Shown here: one piece after another, positions 20,603 through 54,481 of the stretch
Layout: every line of letters begins with the position of its first letter
How positions within the stretch are numbered: the first letter of the stretch is position 1
IMG/VR virus record: IMGVR_UViG_3300027985_000918
Span: 310,001-374,000 of that record
DNA length: 64,000 nt
Strand: one strand, 5' to 3'
Program-made: the position numbers and the translations under genes
Notes under the pieces: model-generated
Told to the model about the DNA's origin: nothing
The model's database searches: none
What the model saw: only the letters and a program-made list of their open reading frames with translations

Positions 20603-22519
20603 TCACCATCCCGCTCTCCTTCCCTTCAGCTCCATATACCGAGAAACCACCGCCCGAATCGAAACCTCAGGGATGATGTGGATGGCCCACATCTCACCGT
20701 TCTGGAGAATATCGGAGAGATACCGAAGACCCCCTTCCTCCACGGACCCTCGGCGTCCCTTCGAGTCTTTCCCAGGCACGTTCCAATCCATTCCGAGGGC
20801 GTGGTTCAGTACGGCGAGGGCATGCTGGCACACCCCGTGACGGTGCTCCGGGTCCTTGACCACCGGAACGCTGGCGGTCCCCACCGGCTTCCCATACAGG
20901 TACCCAAGGTTCCTTGCCCAATGCTCAGGACCTTGCCACCTCCAATAAGGGCAAGAGCAAGACAGAAACACGTCAGCCTTGGACAGCCTGCGGGCAGTTC
21001 CCCTCACCTTCCCCTGAACCTTCACCTGGTGTACCCCGGATTTCCCTGTCACGTTGAACACCCACATCCCGTTTTTGGTGTCCACCCTCTTGAGCTTGAC
21101 AGGAAGACCCTGGGACTTGCTCCGAATAGTATCGTCCACATTCGCCATGATGTCCGAGATACGGTAGGCCACCTTGGCGAACCTCTTCTCGTCCCTGTTC
21201 TGGAAAGAATGGCCCTCGGGAATGACCTTGGCAGAACCTGGGTTGTCTGTGACAGGGGTCAGATTATCGAGGGTCCTCTCACCACGATCCCTCTTCTCCT
21301 TCCGGTCCTTCCGGTCCACAGCCCGGTCGAATTTCTGACCCGAGTCATCCTTGCGGTCCTGCTTCTCGTACAGCATCTCGGCCTTGCGGGCGAGTCTTTC
21401 GGGCAGGCTGACGGCCACCAGGATGTCCTCGGTATCCTCCAACTCGGGGATGGTCTCGTCAACGTCCTCCTCTTCGTCGTACCCCAGAACCTGATCCAGG
21501 TACTCGAAGAAATAGTCATCATCCACTGCCGCCTCATTGAAGAAGTCCTCCAAAGAACGGCTCATGTACATGCTGCCAACGTGGAACGTCACAGACCCGG
21601 TGAGGGGAGAAACATCCGTGATGAACCCCCACTGCTGGGTGGGAATGTGGTAGAACTCAACAGGATTGATCAGGGCCTGAGCCTTCTTATCCGGGCTCTT
21701 GCTCACCTCTTTCCGGTAGTCTTTGCTCCGTTGTTTGATGCTGCGGGCCCCCCCCGGCCACCTGGTGAACTTGGCGGGTTGATCTCTGCGACGCCGCTGA
21801 TCCCTCTTGTACTTTCCCCGATTCTTGAAGCGGGTGTACCACTTCCTCATCCGAGTGCGGACCTTTCCCCGGTTCCGCCGGTACCACTTCTGGTAGTACC
21901 TCTTGGCCTGCCCACGCTGGTTCCGCTGCCGGTTGGCACCCGGGTACGGGGGGCCGTTGATAGCGGCAGACTTCATCCCCAGCAGCTCCCCGATCTCATC
22001 AAACTGCTGCTCTTCCTCGGTGGGCTGCTGGAACACATCGTGAATGCCCACCCCGTCGGAGCCTCGGCAGTAACCCCCCGCCTTCCTGGGGGTGGCGTTG
22101 TACTTCCGAAGGACCGCCAAGATCTCTTCCTGCGTCGGCATGATGGAGTCATAGCTCTGACCCTCATCGTCGGCGTAGACTCCCGGACGGCGAGTGTTCA
22201 TCCCTGGGCCAGTCTGGGCCGGTTGGGGGTCCTGACCTGGGTGTTTGTCCCCAGGCTTTCCCTGAGTCCGGGCCTTGTCCTTGTGGACAGACTTGCCATC
22301 CTGCCCCGTGCCACTAGGGCCGGGGGTGTTGAAGTTATGCGGCCCCGTCTTCGTGGTGTTGGTCCACTGGGGGCTGGGGAGGGCCTGGGGCTTCCGCTCA
22401 TGTTCCCCCGGGGTACTGGACCCAGGAGAGGGATTCGTATCCTTGACGACGGTCTTGACCCCCCCAAGGTCCTGCGTGCGGTATGCCTGTACGACGTTCA
22501 GGACTCCGTTGCTCATCAC
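20603..22519 (-). CDS. Multi-segment late protein with a highly basic helix and C-terminal SWIM zinc finger
   Basis: CSCPYWRWQG...CQH; R/K/Y/W-rich segment; acidic segment. Confidence 0.75.
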   Translation of the reverse strand: MMSNGVLNVVQAYRTQDLGGVKTVVKDTNPSPGSSTPGEHERKPQALPSPQWTNTTKTGPHNFNTPGPSGTGQDGKSVHKDKARTQGKPGDKHPGQDPQPAQTGPGMNTRRPGVYADDEGQSYDSIMPTQEEILAVLRKYNATPRKAGGYCRGSDGVGIHDVFQQPTEEEQQFDEIGELLGMKSAAINGPPYPGANRQRNQRGQAKRYYQKWYRRNRGKVRTRMRKWYTRFKNRGKYKRDQRRRRDQPAKFTRWPGGARSIKQRSKDYRKEVSKSPDKKAQALINPVEFYHIPTQQWGFITDVSPLTGSVTFHVGSMYMSRSLEDFFNEAAVDDDYFFEYLDQVLGYDEEEDVDETIPELEDTEDILVAVSLPERLARKAEMLYEKQDRKDDSGQKFDRAVDRKDRKEKRDRGERTLDNLTPVTDNPGSAKVIPEGHSFQNRDEKRFAKVAYRISDIMANVDDTIRSKSQGLPVKLKRVDTKNGMWVFNVTGKSGVHQVKVQGKVRGTARRLSKADVFLSCSCPYWRWQGPEHWARNLGYLYGKPVGTASVPVVKDPEHRHGVCQHALAVLNHALGMDWNVPGKDSKGRRGSVEEGGLRYLSDILQNGEMWAIHIIPEVSIRAVVSRYMELKGRRAGW

Positions 22520-22923
22520 TCGTCCCCCTGCCGCTCCATCCAGGCAGAGGCCACCCGGAACACTGCCTCCGGGTCCGAGCTGCGATTCATGCCCCCGCCA
22601 AACGCAGGAGACAGAGCCTCATCCACGAGCTGCTTTTGGGAGAATGGGAGGCGAGCTTCGAGGAAGGTTTCCCCCATTCGGGAAAGGACCAAGGCCGTGC
22701 GATCTAGCACTTCCTCCAGAGCGGCCATTCGGGAGGGGGCATCTACGATCATGTCCCCAGCCACCTGGTACAAGTGCTCCTTCTGGTCGGAGTGCTCCAC
22801 CAGATCCTGTGCCCGGTTGATCAGGTGCCGGAGGCGGTGAGCCTCCAGGCGTGCCTGGGTCACCCCCTCGGTGATCAGTGCCCAGGCAGCCTGAGAACTG
22901 GCGGTTTTTGCGATCTTGCTCAC
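22516..22923 (-). CDS. Hypothetical late (virion) protein
   Basis: KIAKTAS at the N-terminus, RVASAW tag at the C-terminus; GGAGG RBS. Confidence 0.7.
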   Translation of the reverse strand: MSKIAKTASSQAAWALITEGVTQARLEAHRLRHLINRAQDLVEHSDQKEHLYQVAGDMIVDAPSRMAALEEVLDRTALVLSRMGETFLEARLPFSQKQLVDEALSPAFGGGMNRSSDPEAVFRVASAWMERQGDE

Positions 22924-22947
22924 GTTGCAGCCCTCCAGTGGCAGACT

Positions 22948-22978
22948 TCACTCAGGGGCCGCCGATAGGCGAGCAACC
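22948..22978 (-). promoter_or_regulatory. Putative class-I (late) promoter
   Basis: GGT-TGCTCGCC-TAT-N13-GTGA. Confidence 0.6.
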
Positions 22979-22981
22979 GAA

Positions 22982-29048: not shown

Positions 29049-29921
29049 TCAGCGGGTGACGGTCAGGCGGGCCAGGCCACGGGGGTTGTAGGCCCCGATG
29101 CCGAGGTTCTCAAACACAGAGAACCCGATGGTGCGGGCCTTGGGGTCGTCCGCCGAGAGGACGGTCAGCTCGGTACGGACCGGAATGCGACCGAAGTGCT
29201 CGGCTTCGCAGCACAGGTACACGGTCCCGACCGGAACGAGGCGGCTGACGACGATCTGGGCGCCGTAGATGACACCCATGAGACCCGTCTTCAGCAGGAC
29301 CGCCTGGGTTTCGATGTCCAGAATGTCCCGACCGAACTTACGGATGTCGGCATAGTCACGGGCATTCATGTACACCCGGGCCACACGGAGGTCCCAGCGT
29401 TCGATCAGGGCAAAGGCATCGGCCAGCACCGCACCGGAGATCGGAGCGATGACGGGGATGTCCGGGTTAAGCTGACCCGGCAGGCTGTCGAACCCGGCGG
29501 TGGCGATGGAGTCCATGATGGCGAAGACACGCTCGTCCTCGGCAGCCTGGACCTGCGCCCGAGCCAGATCCTGAGCACGCTCGATGAGATCGAAACGGCG
29601 CTCCTTGATCTGGGTGAGCGGGATCTCCGGGTTCGAGGCGATCTCGAACAGGGGGAAGATCACACGCCTGGGCTTCGTGATCGCCAGGATGTTCTGACCC
29701 TCTTCCCCTAGGACAAAGGCGGTGACATCCGGGTCCTTGTCGTAGATGGGGAGGGCCCCATCCGGAAGCTGTTCCACAAGGAACGTCTTGCGCCCGACGG
29801 CAGCGTAGTCACGCCGGGTGCGGAGGGGCGACGTCATGCTGGCGGCCAACTTCGCCCGTCCCATCGGGGTCTGGATCAGCTCGCCAATCAGACGCTGCTT
29901 AACTGCGTTGGTGATGGCCAT
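29049..29921 (-). CDS. Major capsid protein (HK97 fold, no delta domain)
   Basis: Position after protease, scaffold and decoration genes; PLRTRRDY...LPDGALPIYDKD...FEIASNPEI...AEDERVF...NPRG; strong RBS and terminator. Confidence 0.88.
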   Translation of the reverse strand: MAITNAVKQRLIGELIQTPMGRAKLAASMTSPLRTRRDYAAVGRKTFLVEQLPDGALPIYDKDPDVTAFVLGEEGQNILAITKPRRVIFPLFEIASNPEIPLTQIKERRFDLIERAQDLARAQVQAAEDERVFAIMDSIATAGFDSLPGQLNPDIPVIAPISGAVLADAFALIERWDLRVARVYMNARDYADIRKFGRDILDIETQAVLLKTGLMGVIYGAQIVVSRLVPVGTVYLCCEAEHFGRIPVRTELTVLSADDPKARTIGFSVFENLGIGAYNPRGLARLTVTR

Positions 29922-30834: not shown

Positions 30835-32361
30835 TCAGTCCTCGATCCCAAACGCCTTGTTCACGTTGGGGGCGGACTTCCACAAATCGGACAGGTTATC
30901 CACCCTGCTGGAGGCAGTACGAGTCTGGTGACCCAGGCTCGTCACCCCCGTGCTAGCACGGCGGGGCTGCGGGAGCAGATCCAGATCCTCGCTCGCCTGG
31001 TGGCCGGGAAGGCCAGACGAGAAAATCTCGTCCAACAGGGCTTCGTCTGCGGCGGAGAGATGGATGCCCTGACCTTTGCTCAGACCCATCGGGTCGTGGC
31101 CGGAAACGTCGAAGAGGCTGGCGGTCTTGCCGTCTTCGCCCTCGTCTTCGCCTTCGCCCTCGCCCTCGCCCTCGTCTTCGCCTTCGCCCTCGCCCTCGTC
31201 TTCGCCCTCGTCTTCATCCTCCATGGACTTCTTACCGGCCTTCTTGTCCTTCTCCCAGGGCTTCTCGTCCTTATCGTCGTCGTCCTTGTCGTCGTCCTTT
31301 TTCCAGTTCTTCTTGAAGGCCTCGGGAACCTCGCCCGCCAGGACCATCTCCCCGCAAGCGTTCAGCATCCCGACTTCACCCTCAGTGAAGTCTTCCGCCA
31401 TCGCCAACAGGTCCTCCGACGGATCGAACATGGAACCCATCATCTCGTCGCAGGCCACGATGCCGTCACGATCGGTGTCCAGAGCAGCGAACAGAGCCTT
31501 CGAGCCGGTCCAGTCGGCGCCGAGAACGAACCCATCCTCGCCACCGCCGTGCTGGGCGAAGTAGGTGGCGATGCGGTTCTTGAGACTGGCAAATTTCCGG
31601 GAACCCGACTTGGGCTCACCCTTGCCAGGGGCGTCCGCCTCGTCACGCTCCTCCTTCTCCTCCTCCTCGGACTCCGCCGGAGGGTCGTTCTGGTCGGCGC
31701 CCTTGAGCTGAGCCTTCAGGCTGCGAAGCTCCGCCGCCATGTGCTGCAGCATGCCCATGACGTCGTCTCCGGGACCCTCGAAATCGTCGGCATACATGCC
31801 ATCATCAATGTCCATCACACCCAGGTCGTCATCCATCATGCCCATGTCGTCGTCGAACATGTCGTCGTCGTCGTCGAACCCGCCGAGGAACATGTCATCA
31901 TCCATCGCCATGAACCCGCCGCCGAGGCGCTTGAGGCTCGACTCGATGAACTTGTCCGGCAAATCCATCATGTCGAGGGCCTGGGACTCTACCTTGTCCT
32001 GGGAGGCCGCCTTGCCGAGCTGGTGCCGGGCGAGGACGAGACACTTAGCCGCCTTACTCGTGATCTGAGCGGACAGAGCAGCATCCTTCGGGACCCGGGG
32101 GTTCCGCTTGTGGGCGGGATGATCCTGGTCCTCGGAGTCATAGCCCGGAACCGCCGGGGGGTTGCCCTCAGGGTAAGGAGGCCGGCGAACGTCCTCATTC
32201 CAGGATGACGTGTCCCCGTTCTCGTACTGGTGGACGCCCGGATCATCCTGCGAGTGTGCAGGGTGGTCCTGGTCTTCCTTGCCGTAGCCGGGGACTGCGG
32301 GAGGGGCAGACGCCTTGCGGCTCGCCTGACCCCACGTAGTGCGATTGCGCTTGAAGCTCAT
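30835..32361 (-). CDS. Acidic capsid scaffolding protein with an EF-hand
   Basis: Between protease and capsid genes; D/E-rich low complexity; duplicated PPAVPGYxxEDQDHPAH; EF loop DTDRDGIVACDE; many K/R-x-A-S sites. Confidence 0.7.
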   Translation of the reverse strand: MSFKRNRTTWGQASRKASAPPAVPGYGKEDQDHPAHSQDDPGVHQYENGDTSSWNEDVRRPPYPEGNPPAVPGYDSEDQDHPAHKRNPRVPKDAALSAQITSKAAKCLVLARHQLGKAASQDKVESQALDMMDLPDKFIESSLKRLGGGFMAMDDDMFLGGFDDDDDMFDDDMGMMDDDLGVMDIDDGMYADDFEGPGDDVMGMLQHMAAELRSLKAQLKGADQNDPPAESEEEEKEERDEADAPGKGEPKSGSRKFASLKNRIATYFAQHGGGEDGFVLGADWTGSKALFAALDTDRDGIVACDEMMGSMFDPSEDLLAMAEDFTEGEVGMLNACGEMVLAGEVPEAFKKNWKKDDDKDDDDKDEKPWEKDKKAGKKSMEDEDEGEDEGEGEGEDEGEGEGEGEDEGEDGKTASLFDVSGHDPMGLSKGQGIHLSAADEALLDEIFSSGLPGHQASEDLDLLPQPRRASTGVTSLGHQTRTASSRVDNLSDLWKSAPNVNKAFGIED

Positions 32362-32393: not shown

Positions 32394-33944
32394 TCAGTGC
32401 TGTCCCCGGAGGGCCTGGCCCCTCCGAGACATGATGTTGCCGAGCCGCAGGAACACCCTGGCCTCAGCGGTACTGGGCTTGCGCCCAAGGGCGGAGGCAC
32501 AAGCCCCCAGGTAATCACGACCCGTACTGTACCCACTGGGGGCTCCCGCCCTCAGAACGGCCCGGTACAAGTTCCTATCGATCTCGATGCCAGCAGCCTT
32601 GTCCAGCGTTGCCACCCCCTCAATGAGAGCGATGTCCGAGCTGGCCGTCCTGGCCAATACCCGGATAGCAGCTTCGTGCTGGACGGTATCGTTGGGTGCC
32701 GTGGAGTCGTTGACCGCACGGGATGTGTCTTCCTCCCGCATCTGGTCCTTGATCTTCCGCTTCACCCGATCCTGCATGTACTGGGTGAGCTCTTCCTCGG
32801 TCTCCTGGAGGGGAGACCCAGACTGAGCCGGGGCAACAGCGCCACCCTCACCTTCGTCCTCACCCACCTCGTCGCCCTCATCCTCCCATCCGGCAATGAA
32901 ACTGTCTCTCCCCACCGCAAGAACATCCGAGTCCGTCAGAGGACCAGATGTGACCCTTCCCACCACACGAGCGTCCTGGTGGAAACGATCCTCCAAGATG
33001 CTAATGTCCGTGGCGGAACGCCCCATTGTGGCAGCACGCTGCATCTGGTTGGCATCCCACTCCGGGGGCGGGGAGTTGAGAACCTTGGCAGCCCTGTCGA
33101 GCATAACCTGGGTAGGTTCCAACACGTTCCGCAGGACTGCTCCCGTGAACGCTGGAGTTTCCACCCAACTTGCCTCGATGAACCGCACACCGCCAGTGGG
33201 ATCGATGCTATCGTGCCCACACAACTCCGCCACACGGTGCTGGCGGCCCAACTCGTCATAGAACACGGTGCCCTTGGCATACTTGATATGGGCACACATC
33301 TCAGTTTCGTCGGCAGCCCAGTGTCCACACTTGGTACAAATCGTGCCATCCACCGTACAGCCCATGGACATAGTGCCCATCTTTCCGGACTCAATGGCCT
33401 TAACCAGCTCAGTGTGCTTGCGGTCCGTGGCAACGAGGATGTCAATGTAAATGCTATCCCCGATATCACGGGCCACGGCGTCGATGATCCGACCCCGGGA
33501 CTGTGATTCGATCTGAACGTGCTCAACGAAGTTGTGCCCGCCCACAAACGTCTCGAACGCCTTGAGCAAAACCGGGCGGCTCCAGGCATCGAGGTTGTTG
33601 TTGATGAACTTGTCGCAGACCGGCTTTACCCGGTAATCCCCATACCTGCGGTTCACTCGGAACCCATCCTCCATCTGGTGGCCGAGCTTAACCCCCTGGG
33701 GGGACTCGACATCGACCGACGCCACAATGGTGGCATGGGTCAGGAGGAAATTCTTGGGGTTGAACGGCTTACCCAAGAGTTGAGTGGCCCGTTCCACCAG
33801 GTTGCTGGCCATGGCGACCTTGGTGGGCCTGAAATCCTTGGCGATCTTCCCGCTCTGCCTTGCAGCAGCTCGGACATTGCCCCACTGCTTCCGCCCAATT
33901 GACGGATTGGCGATTGTGGCATAGGCGTACTTCATCATCGGCAT
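32394..33944 (-). CDS. Prohead (capsid maturation) serine protease with Zn-finger insert
   Basis: NNNLDAW, NFVEH, GRIID, TMSMGC, CTKCG...CAH, EASWVETPAF; canonical gene position. Confidence 0.8.
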   Translation of the reverse strand: MPMMKYAYATIANPSIGRKQWGNVRAAARQSGKIAKDFRPTKVAMASNLVERATQLLGKPFNPKNFLLTHATIVASVDVESPQGVKLGHQMEDGFRVNRRYGDYRVKPVCDKFINNNLDAWSRPVLLKAFETFVGGHNFVEHVQIESQSRGRIIDAVARDIGDSIYIDILVATDRKHTELVKAIESGKMGTMSMGCTVDGTICTKCGHWAADETEMCAHIKYAKGTVFYDELGRQHRVAELCGHDSIDPTGGVRFIEASWVETPAFTGAVLRNVLEPTQVMLDRAAKVLNSPPPEWDANQMQRAATMGRSATDISILEDRFHQDARVVGRVTSGPLTDSDVLAVGRDSFIAGWEDEGDEVGEDEGEGGAVAPAQSGSPLQETEEELTQYMQDRVKRKIKDQMREEDTSRAVNDSTAPNDTVQHEAAIRVLARTASSDIALIEGVATLDKAAGIEIDRNLYRAVLRAGAPSGYSTGRDYLGACASALGRKPSTAEARVFLRLGNIMSRRGQALRGQH

Positions 33945-33947
33945 GGA

Positions 33948-34583
33948 TCAGCCCTCCATCATGCGCTGGCGGGCCAACCGGATACTGGCGAACGGCTTAG
34001 AGGCTGCCTCTGCCTCAGCCACATCGTCGATGTACTCCGGGTGACCGATGATGTCACACTCCTTGACCAAGAACAGGCACTCCGGGCACCCAAGCAGCCG
34101 CTCGCTCACCCCCCCCTGCCTCTTGTAGGAGGCGGGGCGGAGGATGGCTTCCTTGCACTTTGGGCAGTTGAAATTGCCTGCATCAATCTCCGTCTGGGTT
34201 GCCTTGTAGTGGCGATCCTTGGCGGCCCAGTAGAGGGACTTCTTGACGAACGCCTGGGCAACCCGGGCGGCGCTCTCAGGGGTGAGACTGGCGGCCTTGG
34301 GGCCGCCGGGGACGCTGACCGTCCCGGCACCCCCGGGCACGTTATCATGCTCGGGGTCTGCGGGGATCACGTCCTTCTGCTCATACCGCTGAAGCTCTTC
34401 GACTGGTTTGCGCTCGGACCCGTGAGGCCACTCCACATCCACCATGCCAATGGCGGGATAGACCGTCGTGACACGGCCGATTAGGTCATGGTTGCCGCTC
34501 AGGAATGGGTATACCCGGTCACCAACCTCAAACTCCAAAGCCCGCTGTTGGTAATCCACATATGCAGAGCGGTCGTTACTCAC
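33948..34583 (-). CDS. Hypothetical virion protein (SH3-like plus zinc ribbon)
   Basis: FEVGDRV...GRV...VDVEW; CPKC...CPEC; RVAQAF tag between the two domains. Confidence 0.7.
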   Translation of the reverse strand: MSNDRSAYVDYQQRALEFEVGDRVYPFLSGNHDLIGRVTTVYPAIGMVDVEWPHGSERKPVEELQRYEQKDVIPADPEHDNVPGGAGTVSVPGGPKAASLTPESAARVAQAFVKKSLYWAAKDRHYKATQTEIDAGNFNCPKCKEAILRPASYKRQGGVSERLLGCPECLFLVKECDIIGHPEYIDDVAEAEAASKPFASIRLARQRMMEG

Positions 34584-35243: not shown

Positions 35244-35308
35244 GTCTTCGTGCTCCTGTTCCATCAAGACCTCAACCAAGTATCAGCTCGGGCATTCCAA
35301 GCCCTCCG

Positions 35309-40501: not shown

Positions 40502-40532
40502 CTACCTTCGGCAGAGCTATAAACAAATCACA
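40502..40532 (-). promoter_or_regulatory. Putative class-I (late) promoter
   Basis: TGT-GATTTGTT-TAT-N13-GTAG, upstream of the giant protein. Confidence 0.6.
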
Positions 40533-43058: not shown

Positions 43059-45056
43059 TCACCTTCCTCGGATACTTCCCCGGTTGGACCGGGAGGGTTG
43101 GCGATCCGGGCTCGATCCGCCCCCCTGCATGGCACGGATGCGAGCCTTGCGGGCCTGCTTAGCGGTCAAAGCCCTCTGGGGGAGCATCCCCGGCGGCAAG
43201 TTGTTGTTCCGGCCAGCAATGTGCTTGGGCTTGATGATGTGCTGGCTGGCACACCAGACCATGCGAACAAGTGCATCCGACATGTCGTCGTGCTTACCTT
43301 TGATGTTTGGAGCCTCCACAGTCACCAGATACTTGGTTTGGTACTCTGCCTGGAGTTCCAGCAGCTCTTCGATGTACGGGCAATGCTCAGCGGCTTCGGG
43401 GTCCCCCGTCTTTGACGGCTTGGGCCAGTCGTACAACCTCAGCCTCTTGTCCCACATGAAGTCCTTGAAGTTACGGAACATCTGGGAGCTGAGCTGCTTG
43501 GTGAAATGCTCAGACTGGAGCATCTTCAAACCCCGGTTATGGAGGGCCTGCTCAAACACGATCCCCGCCCACTGATCGAAAATCCCCTCTGCGAACATGA
43601 ACCGCTTGGAAAAGCCGGTAACCCAGTCGGCCACATCGTCGAACTCCAGCCTCTCCAAATGGGCGTACTCACCCTCCCCAGCCCGAATCTGTTCAACGAC
43701 ATCCAGCTCGATCGTACCGTCGTCCCCCAGATGCCCGATGGCAATGGCGCTGCCATCCCCCGCAAGAGCGAAGTCGAGACCAATGTAATGGGGCTGGCGA
43801 GACCGCCCCCGGAGCTTCGGGCGAAGCTCAGTGTCCACACAGGCCAGGAGGTCGTCCTCGTCCTCAATCCACCCCCGGGTGCGATCCGTGAAGTGCCCAC
43901 CGTATTCGGTGAAAAACACAACGGGGTCGGCCCGGTATGCCTGCTCCAACTCATCCCCATCCACGAAAGGGTTGACCTCCCAAGTTGGAGCCTGGATGGC
44001 GATCATGTTGGGGGCGCCACTCATAGCAAGTTGGAATTGCTTGTAGAACTCCCCCTGCCTTCCCAGAGGAGAGCTGATCCCGATCATGCGGCCTTCGACC
44101 GGACCGCCCGCAGCGGGAGAAAAAGCAGACATGGACGGTTTTACAGCGTTCCACACCTCGGTGGCCGAGGACTGGCCCGCATCCGTAAAGTGGGCCATCT
44201 CATCAAGGATAATCACAATGTTACCGGCACCCCGGAGACCTTTGGCTCGGCAGGGACGGAACGTCACACGGATGGTAGCATTGGCCTTTTCATCATCCAC
44301 ATACCGGCCATACCTCTCGATGTCCTTCGGGGTCTGGAACCTGGCATAGGACATGGTATTGTTGGCGGTATACGGGGCAAAGAAAGCACAGTCTTTGTAA
44401 TACCCTGCCACCTTGCTATAAAGGATGCCAGCCTGTTCCTTATCGGTCGCTACCGAAATTAGCTGGATGGGTTCACCTGCGGGCAGTCCATAGTATTCCT
44501 GGGGATCGCCTTTGGAAATCAGCTTATATGTCTCGTAAGCACCGATGATTGAAGCCAACTGGGTTTTGCCCGAACGACGGCCCACCGACAAGATCATGAC
44601 CCGCAGCTCCGTTCCCGGAGCCGTCCTTACACTGCATTGTCCCTTCTCAAACAGGTAATTTAGGTACTCAACCTCCGACATGAACTTCCACTTGCGGCGC
44701 TTCCAGTCAGAGACCATCACCACGTTCTCGTACAGACCCCCCCAATCATCCTGGCTCATGACGTGAGGGAACGTGTTCGCCAGACTGAGGGCCTGCCTCG
44801 GGCGACGGTTCTTGAGGGTGATCTCATCGTACTGGGGGTGACTCCGGGGAACGGGCTTGGAAAGATCCAGACCGTAGGGGTTGTCGTCCAGGGGCATCCC
44901 ATAGTGCAACTTGAGGATGATCCTCTGCACTGGGTACAGCTCCATCCCCAGACCCCATCGGGACTCAGCAAACGTGAGGATGTCTGCTACAGAGGTAGAC
45001 CCGGTGCCCTTCTGGGCGGCACCAATGTCAAGGGCTAGGCTGGCGAGATTCGGCAT
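43059..45056 (-). CDS. terL: Terminase large subunit
   Basis: LYPVQ, Walker A GRRSGKT, Walker B IILDEMAHF, ISSP, nuclease motifs IGLDFA and HDDMSDA. Confidence 0.93.
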   Translation of the reverse strand: MPNLASLALDIGAAQKGTGSTSVADILTFAESRWGLGMELYPVQRIILKLHYGMPLDDNPYGLDLSKPVPRSHPQYDEITLKNRRPRQALSLANTFPHVMSQDDWGGLYENVVMVSDWKRRKWKFMSEVEYLNYLFEKGQCSVRTAPGTELRVMILSVGRRSGKTQLASIIGAYETYKLISKGDPQEYYGLPAGEPIQLISVATDKEQAGILYSKVAGYYKDCAFFAPYTANNTMSYARFQTPKDIERYGRYVDDEKANATIRVTFRPCRAKGLRGAGNIVIILDEMAHFTDAGQSSATEVWNAVKPSMSAFSPAAGGPVEGRMIGISSPLGRQGEFYKQFQLAMSGAPNMIAIQAPTWEVNPFVDGDELEQAYRADPVVFFTEYGGHFTDRTRGWIEDEDDLLACVDTELRPKLRGRSRQPHYIGLDFALAGDGSAIAIGHLGDDGTIELDVVEQIRAGEGEYAHLERLEFDDVADWVTGFSKRFMFAEGIFDQWAGIVFEQALHNRGLKMLQSEHFTKQLSSQMFRNFKDFMWDKRLRLYDWPKPSKTGDPEAAEHCPYIEELLELQAEYQTKYLVTVEAPNIKGKHDDMSDALVRMVWCASQHIIKPKHIAGRNNNLPPGMLPQRALTAKQARKARIRAMQGGGSSPDRQPSRSNRGSIRGR

Positions 45057-46316: not shown

Positions 46317-48298
46317 CACTTGCCCTCCCCGACATTCAACAAAATGCCATCGAACAGTAGCTCTCCCAGCTTTTCGATGTCGGGGGTGTTGTCCAGCGTA
46401 ACGTCCATGTTGGCCACCAACCCGAACTCCGAAACGATACTGGTGTGCTGATTGGTGAACAGAGAGGCGGTGGCCTCAGCATCCGAAGCGTTGGCCCCCT
46501 TGATGGCCTCTTCCTGAAGAGCCCTGAGATCGACCCCCTCCAAAGCGGCGGCCTCGATGAGCGGCTTATTGTAGACGGAGCAGTGACCACTCCCATCCAA
46601 CATGGCTTTCTTGTGGACACAGGACCCGCAGCGCCCCATCGCCAACACCCGCTTGACCTGGTTGGTCCGATGCTTGCTGGCAGCTTCCTTGCAGCCCGTG
46701 TACCCCGTCGGAGAGGCATAGGCTGCAGCGTCCACGTAGACGTGTCCCGCCAACCCCTCATGCTGGGCACGAAGCTCTCGGATATCCTGGGCAGCCTTCC
46801 GCAAAAGGTCAGTGTTCCAACGGGCCTGGATTAGCTGGTCGAGATCCTTCCCCATCCATCCCTCATTCATCGCCCTCCGAGTCCAAAGAGCCAGCCGCTC
46901 AAACTCCGCCGTCTTCGTGGTCCCGCTGCCCTCCTTCCGGCTCAGCTCAGCACCCTTTTTGACGGCCAGGCCGGCACCCTCATAGGTTCCCGTCTTTGGG
47001 GCGGAAACCCACTCGGAGGCCCTCTTGAGCATATCGTCGGTACCGAGCTTCCGCAGCTCATACACCTGGCGAGAGGTCAGATCTCCAGATGCCAGCCACT
47101 GAGAGACCTTCGCCAGAGCCTTGGCCCGACGGGCCTGGGACCCATCGTTGACCCGGATCTCCTCCATCACCTCGGGGGTAGACGCCTGAAACTGGCGTAC
47201 CGCCTCGGCCAGGGTGACAGTGTCAGCAGGTCGGACCTCGACCGGCTTGGGCCTCTCGACATGGAAAGCATAGGCGGCCGTGGGGCCCTTCTTGAACGCC
47301 CCCCGCAGAGCCTCCTGAGGACCCTTGGACAAATCCAGCTCGTAGCCCGCTGCCTTGAGGAGAGGGCCATAGTGCCGGAGAGCCTGCTCCCACGGGACAG
47401 CGGGAACGGCCTGCATCCCTAGCTTGGTCCCGATGGAGGGGTCATCGGTGATGACGTACCGGGCTCCCCGAGCCCGCCTCTTGATCTCCTGAACCCACTT
47501 GCCGTTCTTGATTCCGGGGAAAGCGTTGGCCCGGATGAACACGTTGCCGGCGAGGCCGATGTCCCTGCTCAGGTGAGCCACGACACCTCTGGTGTTGGAT
47601 GCGTCATCACCCAGAGCAGCCACCAAATCCCGCTTGATCTCGTCAAGCGGCTTACCAAAGTGAGCGTCCCGGACAGCCTTCATGGCAGCAGCCCGGACCA
47701 GGTGCTCATCGGAATCCTGCTTGGGGCCGGGAGTTGCCGGATGTGGACTGTTGTTCATCTGCTGGTGGTAGCGCTCCGCCTCCAGGTCCTTAGCCGGGAT
47801 ACGAGAAACGCCATCCGTCCTTCGGTTTACCCCCCAGGCTTCCTCCAGCTCTGCGATACCCTTGTCAACGGGGTTATCGGGGAGTCTGTTCGGGTCCTGA
47901 CCCTGAGTCGGGTCAAGCCAAAGCAGATCCATGATAGCGGCGTTCTTGTCGTGCCCTTCCTCGACAGTGAACATGGTCCCCAGGTGGAGGCCTCCCTCGT
48001 TGTCCTGCATAAGGGCGGCCTCGTCCAAAGGAGCCTCGACGGAAGCACCCATGATGGAAGCCACCATGTCCTGTGGGCGCTTGTAGCTACCCCGATGGGC
48101 ACCACTCCCCGGTGCGGGTCCTGGAGAGGCCCCAGGCAGACCAGGCCGCTCCTTAACTCCCTCACCCATCGTTTGGTCGAAATGGTATCCGTCCAAGCCG
48201 TAGTTCGAGCCCAGACTCCACTGGAAATCTTCGCTAGGCATGTTGGATTCGGCCAGGATCTCGGCCGCCCAATCGAGGGCCTTCTTCTTGTTGCTCAT
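46316..48298 (-). CDS. Large hypothetical virion protein with a Cys cluster
   Basis: 660 aa; GC...CGSC...CSVYNKPL near the C-terminus; in the late operon. Confidence 0.7.
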   Translation of the reverse strand: MSNKKKALDWAAEILAESNMPSEDFQWSLGSNYGLDGYHFDQTMGEGVKERPGLPGASPGPAPGSGAHRGSYKRPQDMVASIMGASVEAPLDEAALMQDNEGGLHLGTMFTVEEGHDKNAAIMDLLWLDPTQGQDPNRLPDNPVDKGIAELEEAWGVNRRTDGVSRIPAKDLEAERYHQQMNNSPHPATPGPKQDSDEHLVRAAAMKAVRDAHFGKPLDEIKRDLVAALGDDASNTRGVVAHLSRDIGLAGNVFIRANAFPGIKNGKWVQEIKRRARGARYVITDDPSIGTKLGMQAVPAVPWEQALRHYGPLLKAAGYELDLSKGPQEALRGAFKKGPTAAYAFHVERPKPVEVRPADTVTLAEAVRQFQASTPEVMEEIRVNDGSQARRAKALAKVSQWLASGDLTSRQVYELRKLGTDDMLKRASEWVSAPKTGTYEGAGLAVKKGAELSRKEGSGTTKTAEFERLALWTRRAMNEGWMGKDLDQLIQARWNTDLLRKAAQDIRELRAQHEGLAGHVYVDAAAYASPTGYTGCKEAASKHRTNQVKRVLAMGRCGSCVHKKAMLDGSGHCSVYNKPLIEAAALEGVDLRALQEEAIKGANASDAEATASLFTNQHTSIVSEFGLVANMDVTLDNTPDIEKLGELLFDGILLNVGEGK

Positions 48299-48978
48299 GC
48301 CGTCCTCCTTGCCGAGTACCGAGCTGCAAGGCGAGATGCCTGCACATGGATATTACCGTCGGCAGAGGCCAGTCTGGGCTTTCCGTCGGTCACCTTATCA
48401 TCGTCCCGATCCGCCTCGGACTCTTCCTGCTCCGCCCACTCCTCCGGGTCCTCCCGAATTTCCTCCACTTCGTCCATGATCTGCTTGACCTCATCCCGAT
48501 CACGGGGGTCTCCACCAGAGTCATCGACCCGAGGATTCCAATGGACGGCCTGCATCTCGTCGTACATCGAGTCGGAAACAGCGCTCAACGCCTCCAGGAC
48601 GTTCGTGTAGAGCTTACGGATGTCCTTAATTGTCAGAATATAACCCTTCCCACCAATGGACCCGTCGGGGCTGATCCGCTGACTCTTGATCTTGTTGAAA
48701 ATGGTGTAGGCACTCTGGGCATGCCCCAGTGCCATCAAAGTAGCTCTCAGGGACTTGGCCAGGGGCTCCAGGTTCTTGGGGTTGAACTCGTAATCGGGGT
48801 CAATCATCCGCTCAGATGCCCCGGCGGGATTCCACGCCCATTCCTTGGAGTCCCCCCCACGATCCTTGATGAAGCGGACTTCACCGGCCGTGCGGTCCAT
48901 GGCGGCACGTTTCATATGTGCCGAAGCCACCCGGCGGATGGCTTCGGCGTCAAGCTGTGGAGTCCTCGTCGTGGACAT
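48295..48978 (-). CDS. Hypothetical virion protein with tags at both ends
   Basis: RRVASAHMKRAA...RTA at the N-terminus; RLAARY...RRTA at the C-terminus. Confidence 0.72.
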   Translation of the reverse strand: MSTTRTPQLDAEAIRRVASAHMKRAAMDRTAGEVRFIKDRGGDSKEWAWNPAGASERMIDPDYEFNPKNLEPLAKSLRATLMALGHAQSAYTIFNKIKSQRISPDGSIGGKGYILTIKDIRKLYTNVLEALSAVSDSMYDEMQAVHWNPRVDDSGGDPRDRDEVKQIMDEVEEIREDPEEWAEQEESEADRDDDKVTDGKPRLASADGNIHVQASRLAARYSARRTA

Positions 48979-49034: not shown

Positions 49035-49454
49035 TCAGTGGGGCATCTGCTTGAACGGAATACGACTACGCAGGCTAAACCCCTCCATCGCCTGATCTAC
49101 TTCATCCGACCCGATAGACCGGGTGTTCACCCCGACACGAAAACCGTAGTTAGCCACCATGACTCTCGGATTCGACTTCGGGCAGAAAAACGTCGTCCCC
49201 AGGCCAGTCCCGCCCGCCCAGGCGTCTCCCGACTCCAGATCCTTCTGAAGCTCCATAAACAGGCCGAAGAGTTTCTTGTCCCATGTCTGGATGGGTTGGA
49301 TCAGATGGTTGGCAGTGCCGTAGCCGGAGAAGCTCGTCCACAGCCAGTAGTCCCCCCCACCGGATTGGTGGAGGTACACCTTAGGGGCTTCTCCTTCTGC
49401 TGCCTGCTTACGAGTATGGGCCTCTGCGACCCTTTTGATTGCTGCACGGTTCAT
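49035..49454 (-). CDS. Hypothetical protein with N-terminal tag
   Basis: MNRAAIKRVAEAHTRKQA leader. Confidence 0.7.
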   Translation of the reverse strand: MNRAAIKRVAEAHTRKQAAEGEAPKVYLHQSGGGDYWLWTSFSGYGTANHLIQPIQTWDKKLFGLFMELQKDLESGDAWAGGTGLGTTFFCPKSNPRVMVANYGFRVGVNTRSIGSDEVDQAMEGFSLRSRIPFKQMPH

Positions 49455-53041: not shown

Positions 53042-53055
53042 AGATCACCTCCGGC

Positions 53056-54141
53056 TCAGCTCCAGACCGAGAACTGGTACTTGTACTTGATGCCGCCCTG
53101 GTCCATCTTCGCCTGGAGCTGCTTCCCCGTCATGCGCTTGATGTCGTCCTGGTTGGCCTTGGCCCACAGGAACATCTTGCGGGCGCCCGCAGGACTGGTA
53201 CTCACCAACTTGGTGTAGTGGGGGTCTCCACCGAAGGCGTACTCATCAAGCTGCTTGTCGGTGTAGCCATTGTTGAGGGTGACGTCGAACGAGGTCCACT
53301 CAGCCTTGATATAGAACTCATCCTTCGCCTTGATCTCGACGGGGGCATAGTCCACCGGCTCAACCTGGAGGTAGTTGACATCCTCTTCTTTAGGCATCCA
53401 ACGACCCGTGAGGGACTGGGAAACCCAATCGGGGTACTCCAAACCCTCTTTATCCAGATCCTTGAACGCCTTCTCGATGGCCTTCTTGAGGCCAGCAGCA
53501 GAGGCTTCGGCGGTCTGGGAGGCGTTGGGCTTCCAGTCCCGCTCCAGGTTCTCGATCATGAAGTAGTCGTAGATCTTCCCCAACGGTCCCGTCCCGTTGA
53601 GACTCTGGATCTGACCACCAATGCCAAACGTGAACCGCTTGAGGCTCCGCTTACCCTTCTGGGGCAGTTCCTCGATGACGACGTAGTGCCGGGGGTGCCC
53701 GGAGATACGGATACGGGTCTTGTCGCCGACGAGAATCTTGTCCCACTTCTCACGGGCGATTCGAGCAGCGGCCCACCGCCCCATGAAGTCCTCATCGGCC
53801 CTGGCTCCCTCAAACTCCCGCCATGCCTGCTCGGCAGCCTTGCCGGTCAGAATGCTCTTGGTCTGGGGGTAGTAGAGGACCCGGTCACCCGCCCGGAAAG
53901 GGATTCCCTTCTCATCCACGCCGGGGCGCCGGGCGTTGATCCAGCGGGGGTCTCCCCCCTGACCACGGCTCCGGCCGGACCAGCCGGCCGACTTATCGTC
54001 GTTGCCCTCAACATACCCGAGCCCCGGGTCCTCCGCTGACTCCACGTTGAGGTGGGCGTGCTTCCGAAGGAGAGGAACCAGGTGCTTGCGGATGGACGGC
54101 ACGTCCACTGCCAACTTGCTCAGCTTGCTGTAGAGATTCAT
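53056..54141 (-). CDS. Hypothetical multi-segment protein with N-terminal KLA-P tag
   Basis: MNLYSKLSKLAVDVPSIRKHLVPLLRKHA; internal KSA, RWA and RIA sites. Confidence 0.72.
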   Translation of the reverse strand: MNLYSKLSKLAVDVPSIRKHLVPLLRKHAHLNVESAEDPGLGYVEGNDDKSAGWSGRSRGQGGDPRWINARRPGVDEKGIPFRAGDRVLYYPQTKSILTGKAAEQAWREFEGARADEDFMGRWAAARIAREKWDKILVGDKTRIRISGHPRHYVVIEELPQKGKRSLKRFTFGIGGQIQSLNGTGPLGKIYDYFMIENLERDWKPNASQTAEASAAGLKKAIEKAFKDLDKEGLEYPDWVSQSLTGRWMPKEEDVNYLQVEPVDYAPVEIKAKDEFYIKAEWTSFDVTLNNGYTDKQLDEYAFGGDPHYTKLVSTSPAGARKMFLWAKANQDDIKRMTGKQLQAKMDQGGIKYKYQFSVWS

Positions 54142-54172
54142 GTTGTTACCTGCCTGGAACTACTGGGTTAGG

Positions 54173-54481
54173 TTACCAAACCCCTGTTGTCTCAAAACCC
54201 CGCCTCTCGAACCAGCTCTGAAGAGACAGCATAGCTTCCCGATTCGAGGACCACAGAGTCACACAGTCGAAACTCTCTCGGATGCCGAGGTCTGGGATGG
54301 TAGGCACCCCCGCCATCGCCACCTTGCCATCTCTCTGGGATCGGAGCAGCCCGGGGATGTAGCGGTAATCCTTCGCCCCGTACAAGACCGAGAATCGAAA
54401 CTCAGCGGTGGCGATGCGGCTGACCCACCTCCGGGCCACTCGCCTTGCCATGACGATCCTCTTCTCGTTATCCTGGGACAT
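54173..54481 (-). CDS. Hypothetical protein, first gene of the late operon
   Basis: RRVARRWVSRIA leader; AGGAG RBS. Confidence 0.7.
   Translation of the reverse strand: MSQDNEKRIVMARRVARRWVSRIATAEFRFSVLYGAKDYRYIPGLLRSQRDGKVAMAGVPTIPDLGIRESFDCVTLWSSNREAMLSLQSWFERRGFETTGVW

What the first reader, a model, noticed from the sequence alone, without database searches (positions are those of the whole stretch)
22516..54481. Candidate new system: shared helical address tags plus K/R-x-A cleavage sites for loading diverse cargo into the capsid
Seen: R-[VLI]-[AS]-x-x-[YWFH] occurs 11 times at termini or domain boundaries of six otherwise unrelated late proteins. These are RVASAW (22516), RVAQAF (33948), RVAQAY/RIAKTF/RVSAKY/RLAAEW/RVASAY (35363), RVASAH and RLAARY (48295), RVAEAH (49035) and RVARRW (54173). 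The tag is usually flanked by K/R-x-A (KRA, RQA, KQA, RTA, KEA, RIA). The scaffold and protease are rich in the same sites (RKAS, KTAS, RRAS, RTAS). By eye I did not find the tag in the metabolic or replication proteins. Known: T4 uses a capsid-targeting sequence removed by the prohead protease, and phiKZ-like head proteases cleave many proteins at short motifs. Inference: a modular tag-and-cut system that works at N-terminal, C-terminal or internal positions and lets the phage add injected effectors. It could be reused for protein packaging.
Basis: partly seen in the sequence, partly recalled or inferred. Interest (0 to 1): 0.9.

Follow-up and report, generated by a model that had tools for sequence, protein, structure and literature searches.

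The report
Shared helical tag on phage head cargo
An uncultured 402-kb "huge" phage carries the same short helical peptide, flanked by likely protease sites, on six unrelated head-gene proteins, which probably marks them for loading into the capsid much as phage T4's targeting sequence does, but this has not been tested experimentally.

Summary
All 11 listed matches are at the stated places. The loose pattern occurs 16 times against 3.6 expected; RVAxA[YWFH] occurs 6 times against 0.07. Seven sites are strong when scored without their own family. The four weaker ones are conserved in orthologues or in context.

The motif is a roughly 14-residue amphipathic helix, a-[AVI]-x-R-[VLI]-A-x-[AR]-[YWFH]-x-[KR]-[KR]. 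It lies at N-termini, C-termini and every recognisable domain boundary of a 1,706-aa multi-enzyme protein next to the portal gene. That protein carries a 2H phosphoesterase, a zincin-like HExxH region and a topoisomerase IB.

- The tag is conserved at the same positions in dozens of related metagenomic phages, while the linkers around it vary.
- In AlphaFold2 models it is a helix set off by disordered linkers.
- K/R-x-A is the most over-represented i,i+2 pair in the head proteins, and conserved K/R-x-(A/S/G) sites lie between tag and protein body.

Best reading: a docking helix plus maturation-protease cuts, analogous to T4's capsid targeting sequence but position-independent and with different sequences. 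Packaging, cleavage and injection are inferred only. I rate it a new variant of a known kind.

The parts
22516..22923 (-). 135-aa helical protein with the tag at its C-terminus (aa 119-132, window 22528-22569)
   Evidence: and translation check. In the 24-member family alignment the C-terminal [RK][VL]Ax[RA][YFW][LM] is kept while the preceding FGGG-rich linker varies. In 5 members an extra domain follows the tag. Column conservation forms an island of about 7 residues.
33948..34583 (-). 211-aa conserved head-module protein: small beta-barrel, disordered linker, tag (aa 103-116, window 34236-34277), zinc ribbon
   Evidence: The tag is conserved as RVAxA[FY]VKKaLYW in about 29 of 33 relatives and is preceded by a [KR]x[ASG] site in most. 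The AF2 model has strands 23-66, a disordered stretch 73-97, a helix 102-116 and a zinc ribbon at pLDDT above 90. The barrel is KOW/Tudor-like.
35363..40483 (-). 1,706-aa polyvalent protein immediately downstream of the portal gene, containing a 2H phosphoesterase (aa 65-168), an HEITH zincin-like region (aa ~430-670), a small beta domain and topoisomerase IB (aa 788-986)
   Evidence: Pfam: Topoisom_I 3e-30 and 2_5_RNA_ligase2 9e-11. Zincin_1 gives only E=0.063, with an HEITH motif at aa 558. Relatives keep Topo IB but vary the other domains.
39218..39259 (-). Tag at aa 409-422 of the polyvalent protein (RVAQAY), between the 2H-containing region and the zincin-like region
   Evidence: Leave-family-out score 21.2 bits. 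RTAG lies upstream and KRAA downstream.
38423..38464 (-). Tag at aa 674-687 (RIAKTF), between the zincin-like region and the small beta domain
   Evidence: 10.8 bits alone. Conserved as RVAKSF in the closest relative L005.
38189..38230 (-). Tag at aa 752-765 (RVSAKY), about 30 residues before the Topo IB catalytic core
   Evidence: 17.0 bits. A tag lies at or just before (20-40 aa upstream of) the start of the Topo IB match in four of the five relatives with a mapped Topo IB domain (L005, L074, L013, L027), and at the orthologous position in L040, L055 and L001/L017.
37337..37414 (-). Tandem tags at aa 1024-1049 (RLAAEW and RVASAY), directly after Topo IB
   Evidence: 10.1 and 16.4 bits, with translation. 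This 40-residue stretch is an indel relative to LR745208.1.
40421..40462 (-). Candidate extra tag-like stretch at the N-terminus of the polyvalent protein (aa 8-21, RRLAVRQ, lacking the aromatic residue)
   Evidence: 12.1 bits, not in the training set. Weak.
48295..48978 (-). 227-aa helical-bundle protein with an N-terminal tag (aa 12-25, window 48904-48945) and a C-terminal tag (aa 212-225, window 48304-48345)
   Evidence: Tag-like sequences recur at both ends in most of the seven family members (clear at the N-terminus in 5, at the C-terminus in 4-5). The N-tag is separated from the core by the conserved [KR]-x-A-G-E-V-R-F. The C-tag is preceded by [KR]xA in all members. AF2 gives helices 11-27 and 211-226, set off from the core by disordered stretches 28-53 and 194-210.
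49035..49454 (-). 139-aa protein with an N-terminal tag (aa 4-17, window 49404-49445)
   Evidence: 21.2 bits leave-family-out, with KQAA downstream. It has no homologue in the related loci. In L027 the same gene slot holds an unrelated 301-aa ORF with an N-terminal tag-like match.
54173..54481 (-). 102-aa protein with an N-terminal tag (aa 10-23, window 54413-54454)
   Evidence: 10.4 bits alone, but [RK]x[VL]Ax[RQ]W[LV] is conserved in all 6 family members.
32394..33944 (-). 516-aa prohead (head maturation) protease, the candidate enzyme for the K/R-x-small sites
   Evidence: PHROG head maturation protease 5.6e-13. No Pfam, NCBIfam or PDB sequence match. 1,600 unannotated homologues. The family has conserved KAA[ST] after the catalytic domain and [RK]xASSD in the C-terminal domain.
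30835..32361 (-). 508-aa acidic scaffold-like protein with six [KR]xAS sites
   Evidence: RKASAPPA near the N-terminus, and PQPRKAS and TRTAS near the C-terminus, are conserved across relatives while the acidic repeats between them vary.
34608..35279 (-). 223-aa acidic scaffold-like protein with conserved TKKGA near the N-terminus and GKKASHGFNL at the C-terminus
   Evidence: It is fused to the C-terminus of the polyvalent protein in some relatives (L084, L013, L027).
29049..29921 (-). HK97-fold major capsid protein, with no delta domain
   Evidence: NCBIfam capsid_Caudo_2 3e-41 and PHROG major head protein 4e-48. It is 84-96% identical across the 78 best of 533 IMG/VR relatives.
40528..42435 (-). 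Portal protein
   Evidence: PHROG portal 1.4e-25.
43059..45056 (-). Terminase large subunit
   Evidence: PHROG terminase large subunit 5.5e-28.

Best explanation
**What it is.** The window is part of a 402-kb uncultured huge phage, distantly related to Bacillus phage G. Its head genes run portal, multi-enzyme 'polyvalent' protein, small acidic protein, small conserved protein, protease, scaffold, decoration, capsid protein. On my recollection this resembles the T4 order.

**The tag.** Six proteins in this module share a roughly 14-residue basic amphipathic helix, a-[AVI]-x-R-[VLI]-A-x-[AR]-[YWFH]-x-[KR]-[KR]. I propose it is a docking peptide that recruits these proteins, and each enzyme domain of the polyvalent protein, into the assembling prohead. 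The partner would be a conserved internal component: the scaffold core, the inner capsid surface, or the protease.

**The cut.** Short K/R-x-(A/S/G) sites in the disordered linkers next to the tags, and in the scaffold-like proteins and the protease itself, are proposed targets of the prohead protease. Cleavage would free the cargo from its tag, separate the polyvalent domains and dismantle the scaffold. The enzymes would then be delivered with the DNA.

**Shown here:** motif reality, position, conservation, helical and linker context, site enrichment and conservation, the enzyme nature of the cargo, and domain shuffling with tags retained.

**Inferred only:** binding partner, packaging, cleavage and injection.
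For: - **Motif statistics:**
- **Positions:** the tag sits only at termini or domain boundaries.
- **Conservation at orthologous positions, with variable linkers:**
  - 22 of 24 members of the 22516 family keep it.
  - Both ends of the 48295 family keep it in most members.
  - All 6 members of the 54173 family keep it.
  - About 29 of 33 members of the 33948 family keep it.
- **Separable by indels:**
  - Four 33948-family members lack the tag.
  - Two have an insert after it.
  - The tandem tags after Topo IB are an indel relative to LR745208.1.
- **Helix evidence:**
  - Hydropathy periodicity peaks at 80-100 degrees.
  - AF2 models show helices flanked by low-confidence linkers.
- **Site evidence:**
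  - KxA and RxA are the two most enriched i,i+2 pairs.
  - T4-type [LI]xE and phiKZ-type [ASG]xE are not enriched.
  - For the three N-terminal tags and the 48295 C-terminal tag, the site lies between tag and protein body.
  - Sites are conserved in the scaffold-like and protease families.
- **Cargo diversity:**
  - Polyvalent homologues keep tags beside Topo IB but vary their other domains (GNAT, DUF5661, CPD).
  - In LR745208.1 the 2H phosphoesterase is a separate protein with two tags.
  - A whole-genome scan there gives 9 hits at 14 bits or more against 0.5 expected.
- **Coding-strand control:** 94 against 3 hits at 14 bits or more in coding-strand versus opposite-strand ORFs of related loci. 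This count is partly circular, because orthologues were in the training set.
- **Precedent:** the T4 CTS (PMC3012670), giant-phage propeptides (PMC10052503), and the prediction that polyvalent proteins are packaged (PMC5512222).
Against: - No virion proteomics or cleavage data exist for this clade, and no cultured member was found.
- The tag was not detected in the sampled head regions of the cultured relatives Tunturi_5 and phage G.
- The tag core R-[VLI]-A itself fits the proposed K/R-x-A site, so 'tag' and 'site' may be one element.
- The protease has no recognisable family or catalytic assignment.
- An embedded zincin-like domain could do some of the cutting.
- Three of the eleven sites are not significant on sequence alone.
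- AF2 confidence for the tag helices is only about 45-65.
- The 22516 protein lies about 6 kb beyond the capsid gene, among genes of unknown role, so its head association is assumed.
Confidence: 0.45

Rival explanations
1. The motif is only an extended recognition or cleavage determinant of the maturation protease (P3 Arg, P1 Ala, P3' aromatic) or a protease-docking exosite. It marks where head proteins are trimmed and the polyprotein is cut, and has no role in getting proteins into the capsid.
For: - R-[VLI]-A matches the enriched K/R-x-A pattern.
- Tags sit exactly where cuts would separate domains.
- By my recollection, in T4 the targeting leader ends in the cleavage site, so the two functions can overlap.
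Against: - Conservation extends over about 14 residues with helical periodicity, and AF2 predicts a helix. That is atypical for a protease substrate segment, whereas the plain K/R-x-A-S sites lie in Gly/Pro-rich disordered linkers.
- The scaffold-like proteins have many K/R-x-A-S sites but no tag.
- Separate sites are conserved between tag and body.
Confidence: 0.2
2. The helix mediates association among the internal proteins themselves, or with packaged DNA, for example to build an inner body or ejection complex. It would not be an address for loading; entry into the prohead would be governed by something else.
For: - The helix is basic and amphipathic with an Ala-rich face.
- Tandem and multiple copies in one protein would suit multivalent assembly.
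- A conserved structural protein (the 33948 family) carries the same helix.
Against: Terminal placement behind a conserved cleavage-type site implies the helix is removed from several proteins. That fits a transient assembly signal better than a permanent structural contact.
Confidence: 0.15
3. The helix acts after injection. It would be a shared peptide that docks the delivered enzymes onto a host hub protein or the membrane.
For: The tagged domains are enzymes plausibly active in the host: 2H phosphoesterase, Topo IB, metallopeptidase, and an SNF2 helicase in LR745208.1.
Against: - The same helix is on small non-enzymatic head-module proteins and on the conserved protein next to the protease.
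- It resembles no host-hub or membrane-targeting motif that I recall.
- The conserved sites between tag and body argue for removal before delivery.
Confidence: 0.07
4. Chance or compositional artefact of an Ala/Arg-rich, 60% G+C proteome.
For: The loose hexamer is expected about 3.6 times by chance, and five extra matches in the window look like chance.
Against: - The strict form occurs 6 times against 0.07 expected.
- Leave-family-out scores reach 26 bits.
- The motif is conserved in orthologues.
- There are 94 against 3 hits on coding versus opposite-strand ORFs.
Confidence: 0.01

Closest known systems
Phage T4 capsid targeting sequence (CTS) of the internal proteins, processed by the prohead protease
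   Same: - A short shared peptide sits on otherwise diverse, fast-evolving head-internal proteins and directs them into the scaffolding core (PMC3012670).
- It is separated from the mature protein by a protease site.
- By my recollection the gene order portal, small core proteins, protease, scaffold, capsid protein is similar.
   Different: - The tag sequence differs, and so does the candidate cleavage motif: K/R-x-A/S/G here, with [LI]xE not enriched.
- Tags also occur at C-termini and between the domains of a polyprotein.
- The protease is not recognisable as a T4 gp21 relative by Pfam.
Propeptide processing in giant phages (SPN3US gp245, phiKZ, 201phi2-1)
   Same: - Many head and ejection proteins are cut by one prohead protease at a short motif.
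- The protease self-trims its C-terminus.
- The propeptides are suspected to target proteins to the prohead (PMC10052503).
   Different: - Those cuts follow Glu and remove N-terminal propeptides of 20-254 residues.
- No shared helical tag has been described there.
- [ASG]xE is depleted here.
Polyvalent proteins of phages and conjugative elements (Iyer et al. 2017, PMC5512222)
   Same: - The 1,706-aa protein is a multi-enzyme polypeptide encoded next to the portal.
- It has 2H phosphoesterase and zincin-like modules, and is predicted to be packaged and injected.
   Different: - That work proposed embedded metallopeptidases for processing. The passages I read describe no shared inter-domain peptide.
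- Here a conserved helix plus basic-x-small sites mark each boundary.
Encapsulin cargo-loading peptides
   Same: By my recollection, these are short peptides shared by unrelated cargo enzymes that dock on the interior of an HK97-fold shell. This is the concept of a portable address tag.
   Different: - Encapsulins have no portal, DNA, scaffold or maturation protease.
- Their peptides are not cleaved off.
- No sequence relation was tested or is expected.
Herpesvirus assemblin maturation and release sites
   Same: By my recollection, cleavage there lies between a small residue (Ala) and Ser in scaffold and protease precursors. The conserved x-A-S sites in this scaffold and protease resemble that.
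   Different: - The P3 preference here is basic.
- The fold and catalytic residues of this protease are unknown.
Phage P1 Dar internal head proteins
   Same: Anti-defence enzymes are loaded into the head in a defined way and injected, and some are proteolytically processed (PMC5512222).
   Different: I know of no shared short motif there. No homology was tested beyond a weak ParB-like hit in the 46316 protein.

Membership tests
T4-type capsid targeting sequence system | One short peptide shared by otherwise unrelated head-internal proteins | tested here: met
   Six proteins share no similarity beyond about 20 residues around the motif.
T4-type capsid targeting sequence system | The peptide is an N-terminal leader removed by the prohead protease at its consensus site | tested here: inconclusive
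   Three tags are N-terminal, with a conserved K/R-x-A site before the protein body. Two are C-terminal and six are internal. There are no cleavage data.
T4-type capsid targeting sequence system | gp21-family protease cutting after Glu in [LI]-x-E | tested here: not met
   The protease has no Pfam or NCBIfam match, only a PHROG 'head maturation protease' hit. [LI]xE is not enriched (z 1.0), while KxA and RxA are the top pairs.
T4-type capsid targeting sequence system | Tagged proteins are packaged in the head and injected | not testable with these tools
   No cultured member and no proteomics; only gene neighbourhood supports it.
Polyvalent proteins (Iyer et al. 2017) | Two or more unrelated enzymatic or effector domains in one polypeptide | tested here: met
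   2H phosphoesterase 9e-11 and Topo IB 3e-30 are in one 1,706-aa ORF.
Polyvalent proteins (Iyer et al. 2017) | Encoded among head and packaging genes of a portal-terminase phage | tested here: met
   It lies directly downstream of the portal and terminase genes.
Polyvalent proteins (Iyer et al. 2017) | Embedded zincin-like metallopeptidase (common, not obligatory) | tested here: inconclusive
   Pfam Zincin_1 gives E=0.063, below the cut-off. An HEITH motif lies at aa 558.
Giant-phage (phiKZ/SPN3US) propeptide processing | Cleavage after Glu in an A/S/G-x-E motif | tested here: not met
   [ASG]xE is depleted in the head-module proteins (z -2.6).
Encapsulin cargo loading | HK97-fold shell with cargo docked by a short terminal peptide | tested here: inconclusive
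   The shell protein is HK97-fold and cargo carries short peptides, but binding to the shell is untested.
Encapsulin cargo loading | Stand-alone compartment without portal, DNA packaging or maturation protease | tested here: not met
   Portal, terminase and protease are all present. This is an analogy only.

The most novel reading that the evidence does not exclude
A widespread clade of huge phages (533 IMG/VR contigs encode a relative of this capsid protein) uses a single portable, position-independent helical peptide plus basic-x-small protease sites to load interchangeable enzyme modules into the capsid for injection. The modules include topoisomerase IB, 2H phosphoesterase, metallopeptidase, acetyltransferase and possibly an SNF2 helicase. 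Each domain of a polyvalent protein carries its own tag as a movable cassette. This would give the first sequence rule for how polyvalent proteins are packaged, and a new tag for protein encapsidation.
Probability: 0.35. Interest if true: 0.8.

Novelty: new variant of a known kind. Interest (0 to 1): 0.6.

Why it matters
**The open question.** How large multi-enzyme 'polyvalent' proteins and other injected enzymes get into phage heads is mostly unknown outside T4.

**What a sequence rule would allow.** A conserved, recognisable tag with adjacent cleavage sites would let the virion-delivered arsenal of uncultured huge phages be predicted from sequence alone. That arsenal may include counter-defence enzymes such as 2H phosphoesterases.

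**What it would explain.** It would account for enzyme modules moving between stand-alone genes and polyproteins.

**Practical use.** It would offer a second, position-flexible peptide for loading foreign proteins into HK97-type shells.

**If only cleavage is right.** It would still define the specificity of a large, unannotated prohead protease family with about 1,600 homologues.

Tried and rejected
**Searches that found nothing**
- Megablast of the region against phage genomes gave no match. Relatives were found only at protein level.
- The protease alone, and as a 16-sequence profile, matched no PDB sequence.
- Pfam and NCBIfam gave no protease family. A 5.8-billion-protein search found 1,600 homologues, all unannotated.
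- A Foldseek search of the 33948 model gave only generic KOW/Tudor-like barrels.
- Searches for relatives of the tagged SNF2 helicase and 2H protein of LR745208.1 in IMG/VR returned only identical copies, so their tag conservation is untested.
- The tag was not found in the sampled Tunturi_5 regions (32 kb plus 47 kb) or phage G region (40 kb).

**Methods that misled**
- Iterating an HMM on all hits became dominated by the 33948 family, so I replaced it with a family-balanced matrix.
- My first matrix had a one-residue register error in typed-in instances and was discarded for the corrected one.

**Matches rejected as tags**
- RIATYF in the scaffold-like protein is the entering helix of a conserved EF-hand.
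- RVARVY in the capsid protein and the matches in 49458, 2332 and 62248 are at chance level.
- TnpB hits in LR745208.1 belong to the transposase fold.

**Unfinished**

Full report
**What the window is**

The window is 60% G+C, and nearly all genes from about 11 kb onward lie on the minus strand. It is identical to part of a 402,383-bp IMG/VR contig. It has no nucleotide-level relative among deposited phages.

At protein level its capsid and portal proteins match three phages:

| Relative | Genome size | Capsid protein identity | Portal identity |
|---|---|---|---|
| uncultured phage LR745208.1 | 485 kb | 82% | 64% |
| Tunturiibacter phage Tunturi_5 | 309 kb | 49% | 38% |
| Bacillus phage G | 498 kb | 38% | 27% |

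IMG/VR holds 533 contigs encoding a relative of this capsid protein. The best 78 outside the window's own contig are 84-96% identical. Other head proteins are only about 30-75% identical between the same genomes.

**Gene map of the region, in transcription order on the minus strand**

| Window coordinates | Product |
|---|---|
| 54554 | sigma-factor-like protein |
| 54173 | 102 aa, tagged |
| (several genes) | unknown function |
| 49035 | 139 aa, tagged |
| 48295 | 227 aa, tagged at both ends |
| 46316 | 660 aa |
| (two genes) | small proteins |
| 43059 | terminase large subunit |
| 40528 | portal |
| 35363-40483 | 1,706-aa protein with 2H phosphoesterase and topoisomerase IB domains, five tags |
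| 34608 | 223-aa acidic protein |
| 33948 | 211-aa conserved protein, tagged |
| 32394 | prohead protease |
| 30835 | 508-aa acidic scaffold-like protein |
| 29948 | decoration-protein homologue |
| 29049 | HK97-fold major capsid protein |
| 22516 | 135 aa, tagged; about 6 kb further on |

On my recollection, the order portal, internal proteins, small core proteins, protease, scaffold, capsid protein parallels T4. Tunturi_5 shows the same arrangement, and there the corresponding genes are annotated 'DNA ejection protein' and 'virion structural protein'.

**Check of the observation**

- The loose pattern occurs 16 times in 58 window proteins, against 3.6 expected from per-protein shuffles. The strict RVAxA[YWFH] occurs 6 times against 0.07.
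- Seven instances share a longer consensus and score 24-33 bits on a small HMM. The next best hit in the window scores 2 bits.
- With a family-balanced matrix that leaves out the tested family, those seven score 16-26 bits. The C-terminal site of 48295 scores 13.4. The remaining three (54173, aa 678, aa 1028) score about 10 bits, which is not significant alone.
- The 54173 site is conserved in all six aligned family members, aa 678 has a counterpart in the closest relative, and aa 1028 lies directly beside the strong aa 1040 tag.
One of them (scaffold aa 263) is the entering helix of a conserved EF-hand.
- No protein outside 22516-54481 reaches 12 bits.

**Anatomy of the tag**

- The information-bearing positions are R1, [VLI]2, A3, [RA]5, [YWFH]6 and [KR]8-9, with small or aliphatic residues at -2 and -1.
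- Mean hydropathy has its strongest periodicity at 80-100 degrees, which indicates an amphipathic alpha-helix.
- The AlphaFold2 model of the 33948 family (27 sequences) has four parts:
  - a small beta-barrel (aa 23-66);
  - a disordered Gly/Pro-rich linker (aa 73-97);
  - a helix over the tag (aa 102-116, moderate confidence);
  - a confident zinc ribbon.
- The model of the 48295 family places both tags in helices (aa 11-27 and 211-226). Low-confidence linkers separate them from a helical-bundle core.
- No similarity extends beyond about 20 residues, so this is a short linear element rather than a shared domain.

**Conservation and modularity in relatives**

- **22516 family (24 members).** The C-terminal [RK][VL]Ax[RA][YFW][LM] is kept in 22 members, while the preceding FGGG-type linker and the residues after the tag vary. 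In five members an extra domain follows the tag, which turns it into an internal boundary. Column scores show a seven-residue island of conservation in an otherwise unconserved tail.
- **48295 family.** Both terminal tags recur in most members.
- **54173 family.** The N-terminal tag recurs in all six members.
- **33948 family.** About 29 of 33 members keep the tag. Four lack exactly those residues, and two have an insert right after them, so the tag behaves as a separable unit.
- **The 1,706-aa protein.** The five tags coincide with every recognisable boundary:
  - 2H region | zincin-like HEITH region;
  - zincin-like HEITH region | small beta domain;
  - small beta domain | Topo IB;
  - Topo IB | C-terminal region.
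- **Polyvalent homologues in relatives.** A tag lies just upstream of Topo IB in most of them. Others lie at further boundaries, while the remaining domain content changes (GNAT, DUF5661, CPD-type phosphodiesterase).
- **LR745208.1.** The polyprotein is split. Topo IB is a 508-aa protein with a tag in front. The 2H phosphoesterase is a separate 497-aa protein, encoded about 50 kb from the head genes, with two tags.
- **The gene slot holding 49035** is variable. In L027 it contains an unrelated 301-aa ORF with an N-terminal tag-like match.

**Specificity outside the training data**

- I read LR745208.1 piecewise (10 stretches, 607 predicted proteins) and excluded it from training.
  - At 14 bits or more the matrix finds 9 hits against 0.5 expected.
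  - At 12 bits or more it finds 15 hits against 2.75 expected.
- Three of those hits are orthologues of window tags. The others are:
  - the 2H protein, which has two hits;
  - an SNF2-type helicase, 30 residues from its C-terminus;
  - three proteins of unknown function.
- Across all related loci, coding-strand ORFs give 94 hits at 14 bits or more against 3 on the opposite strand. Many are orthologues of training families, so this is a consistency check rather than an independent test.
- The tag was not detected in the sampled head regions of Tunturi_5 or phage G.

**The candidate cleavage sites**

- Of all 400 i,i+2 residue pairs, KxA (81 against 52) and RxA (90 against 59) are the two most over-represented in the 24 proteins of the region. 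T4-type [LI]xE is not enriched, and phiKZ-type [ASG]xE is depleted.
- [KR]xAS occurs 21 times against 6.9 expected in this region, and 7 against 5.6 in the rest of the window.
- Nine of eleven tags have a [KR]x[ASG][SAGT] site within 14 residues, against 27% for random positions.
- For the three N-terminal tags and the 48295 C-terminal tag, the site lies between the tag and the protein body. In family alignments these sites are conserved inside otherwise variable linkers:
  - [KR]-x-A|GEVRF after the N-tag of the 48295 family;
  - [KR]xA before its C-tag;
  - [KR]x[SAG] in the linker before the 22516-family tag;
  - [KR]x[ASG] before the 33948-family tag.
- The 508-aa scaffold-like family keeps RKASAPPA, PQPRKAS and [RK][TV]AS around highly variable acidic repeats.
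- The 223-aa family keeps TKKGA and a C-terminal KKAS-HGFNL.
- The protease family keeps K-A-A-[ST] after its catalytic domain and [RK]xASSD in its C-terminal domain.
- This is the pattern expected of a maturation protease that dismantles its scaffold, trims itself and releases cargo, but no termini have been measured.

**Most likely mechanism**

The tag is a docking helix that brings head-internal proteins, and each enzyme module of the polyvalent protein, into the prohead through a conserved internal partner. The prohead protease then cuts the adjacent basic-x-small sites. The enzymes stay in the head and enter the host with the DNA.

Only the sequence-level facts above are shown; the partner, loading, cutting and injection are inferred. 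I put this at about 0.45.

The main rival (0.2) is that the helix is itself an extended protease recognition element, because R-[VLI]-A fits the site pattern. The length and helical character of the conserved stretch argue against that, as do the tag-free but site-rich scaffolds and the separately conserved sites. Other rivals are:
- an inner-body or DNA-association helix (0.15);
- a post-injection host-docking peptide (0.07);
- chance (0.01).

**Comparison with known systems**

- **T4 capsid targeting sequence.** This is the closest functional match. It is a conserved short peptide on a diverse set of internal anti-defence proteins that directs them into the scaffolding core, and it has been used to package foreign proteins (PMC3012670).
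- **Giant-phage propeptide processing** is also close (PMC10052503).
- **Differences from both:**
  - tag sequence;
  - candidate site chemistry;
  - use at C-terminal and internal positions;
  - one tag per domain of a polyprotein;
  - a protease with no recognisable family.
- **Polyvalent proteins.** The 1,706-aa protein meets the definition of a polyvalent protein (PMC5512222). In the passages I read, that work predicted packaging but gave no sequence rule for it.
- **Encapsulin cargo-loading peptides** are a conceptual analogue only.

I found no description of this motif in the papers I searched and read. The library is incomplete, so this is not proof of absence.

**Verdict**

- The feature is a new variant of a known kind.
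- Interest is 0.6. It is a well-supported computational lead in a large uncultured phage clade, and a procapsid co-expression experiment could settle it.

Noticed in passing
window 31447-31482 (-), aa 294-305 of the 508-aa scaffold-like protein: There is a canonical EF-hand calcium-binding loop (DxDxDGxIxxxE-type, 'DTDRDG...DE'). It is conserved as DTDGDGF in most relatives, which suggests a calcium-binding scaffold protein.
   Followed up: partly
window 29049-29921 (-) and loci L034-L108: The major capsid protein is 84-96% identical across the 78 best of 533 IMG/VR relatives. Neighbouring head proteins are only about 30-75% identical, so constraint on the shell protein is unusually strong.
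   Followed up: partly
L084:1-3573, L013:1-5034, L027:14132-18946: In some relatives the 223-aa acidic scaffold-like protein is fused to the C-terminus of the polyvalent protein. This would physically link cargo to a scaffold-type module.
   Followed up: partly
LR745208.1 347195-348688 (L116:4198-5688, -): This is a stand-alone 2H phosphoesterase with two tags. It has a weak sub-threshold Pfam match to the anti-CBASS protein Acb1 (E 0.003), which hints that the packaged 2H domain may degrade cyclic-nucleotide immune signals.
   Followed up: no
LR745208.1 228481-230241 (L113:32481-34238, +): An SNF2-family helicase carries a tag-like match (16 bits) 30 residues from its C-terminus. It may be a packaged helicase, but conservation in relatives could not be checked.
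   Followed up: partly
LR745208.1 459970-460680 and 411851-413152: These are two TnpB/IS605 OrfB-type transposase-like genes with an identical internal peptide. One lies inside the head gene region of that genome.
   Followed up: no
protein P0075; L028:8321-11602 and L031:9947-12985: One protease homologue (895 aa) carries Hint/intein Pfam domains. Two terminase homologues are 1,013-1,094 aa against 665 aa here, which suggests inteins or other insertions in essential head genes.
   Followed up: no
window 46316-48298 (-): This 660-aa protein next to the tagged 48295 gene has a weak ParB/RepB/Spo0J-like match (E 0.012, aa 369-508). It is reminiscent of the DdrB-like ParB nucleases found among phage head genes.
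   Followed up: no
window 50453-51709 (-): This 418-aa protein has a sub-threshold pectinesterase-like N-terminal match (E 7e-5, below the Pfam cut-off). It may be a beta-helix virion enzyme.
   Followed up: no
L124 (Tunturi_5 277718-280265): The cultured relative Tunturi_5 has a short (287-aa) protease of the same family. Its C-terminal tail and the neighbouring scaffold-like gp332 contain K-V-A-S-like sites but no detectable tag. It is a possible experimental handle on the protease specificity.
   Followed up: partly
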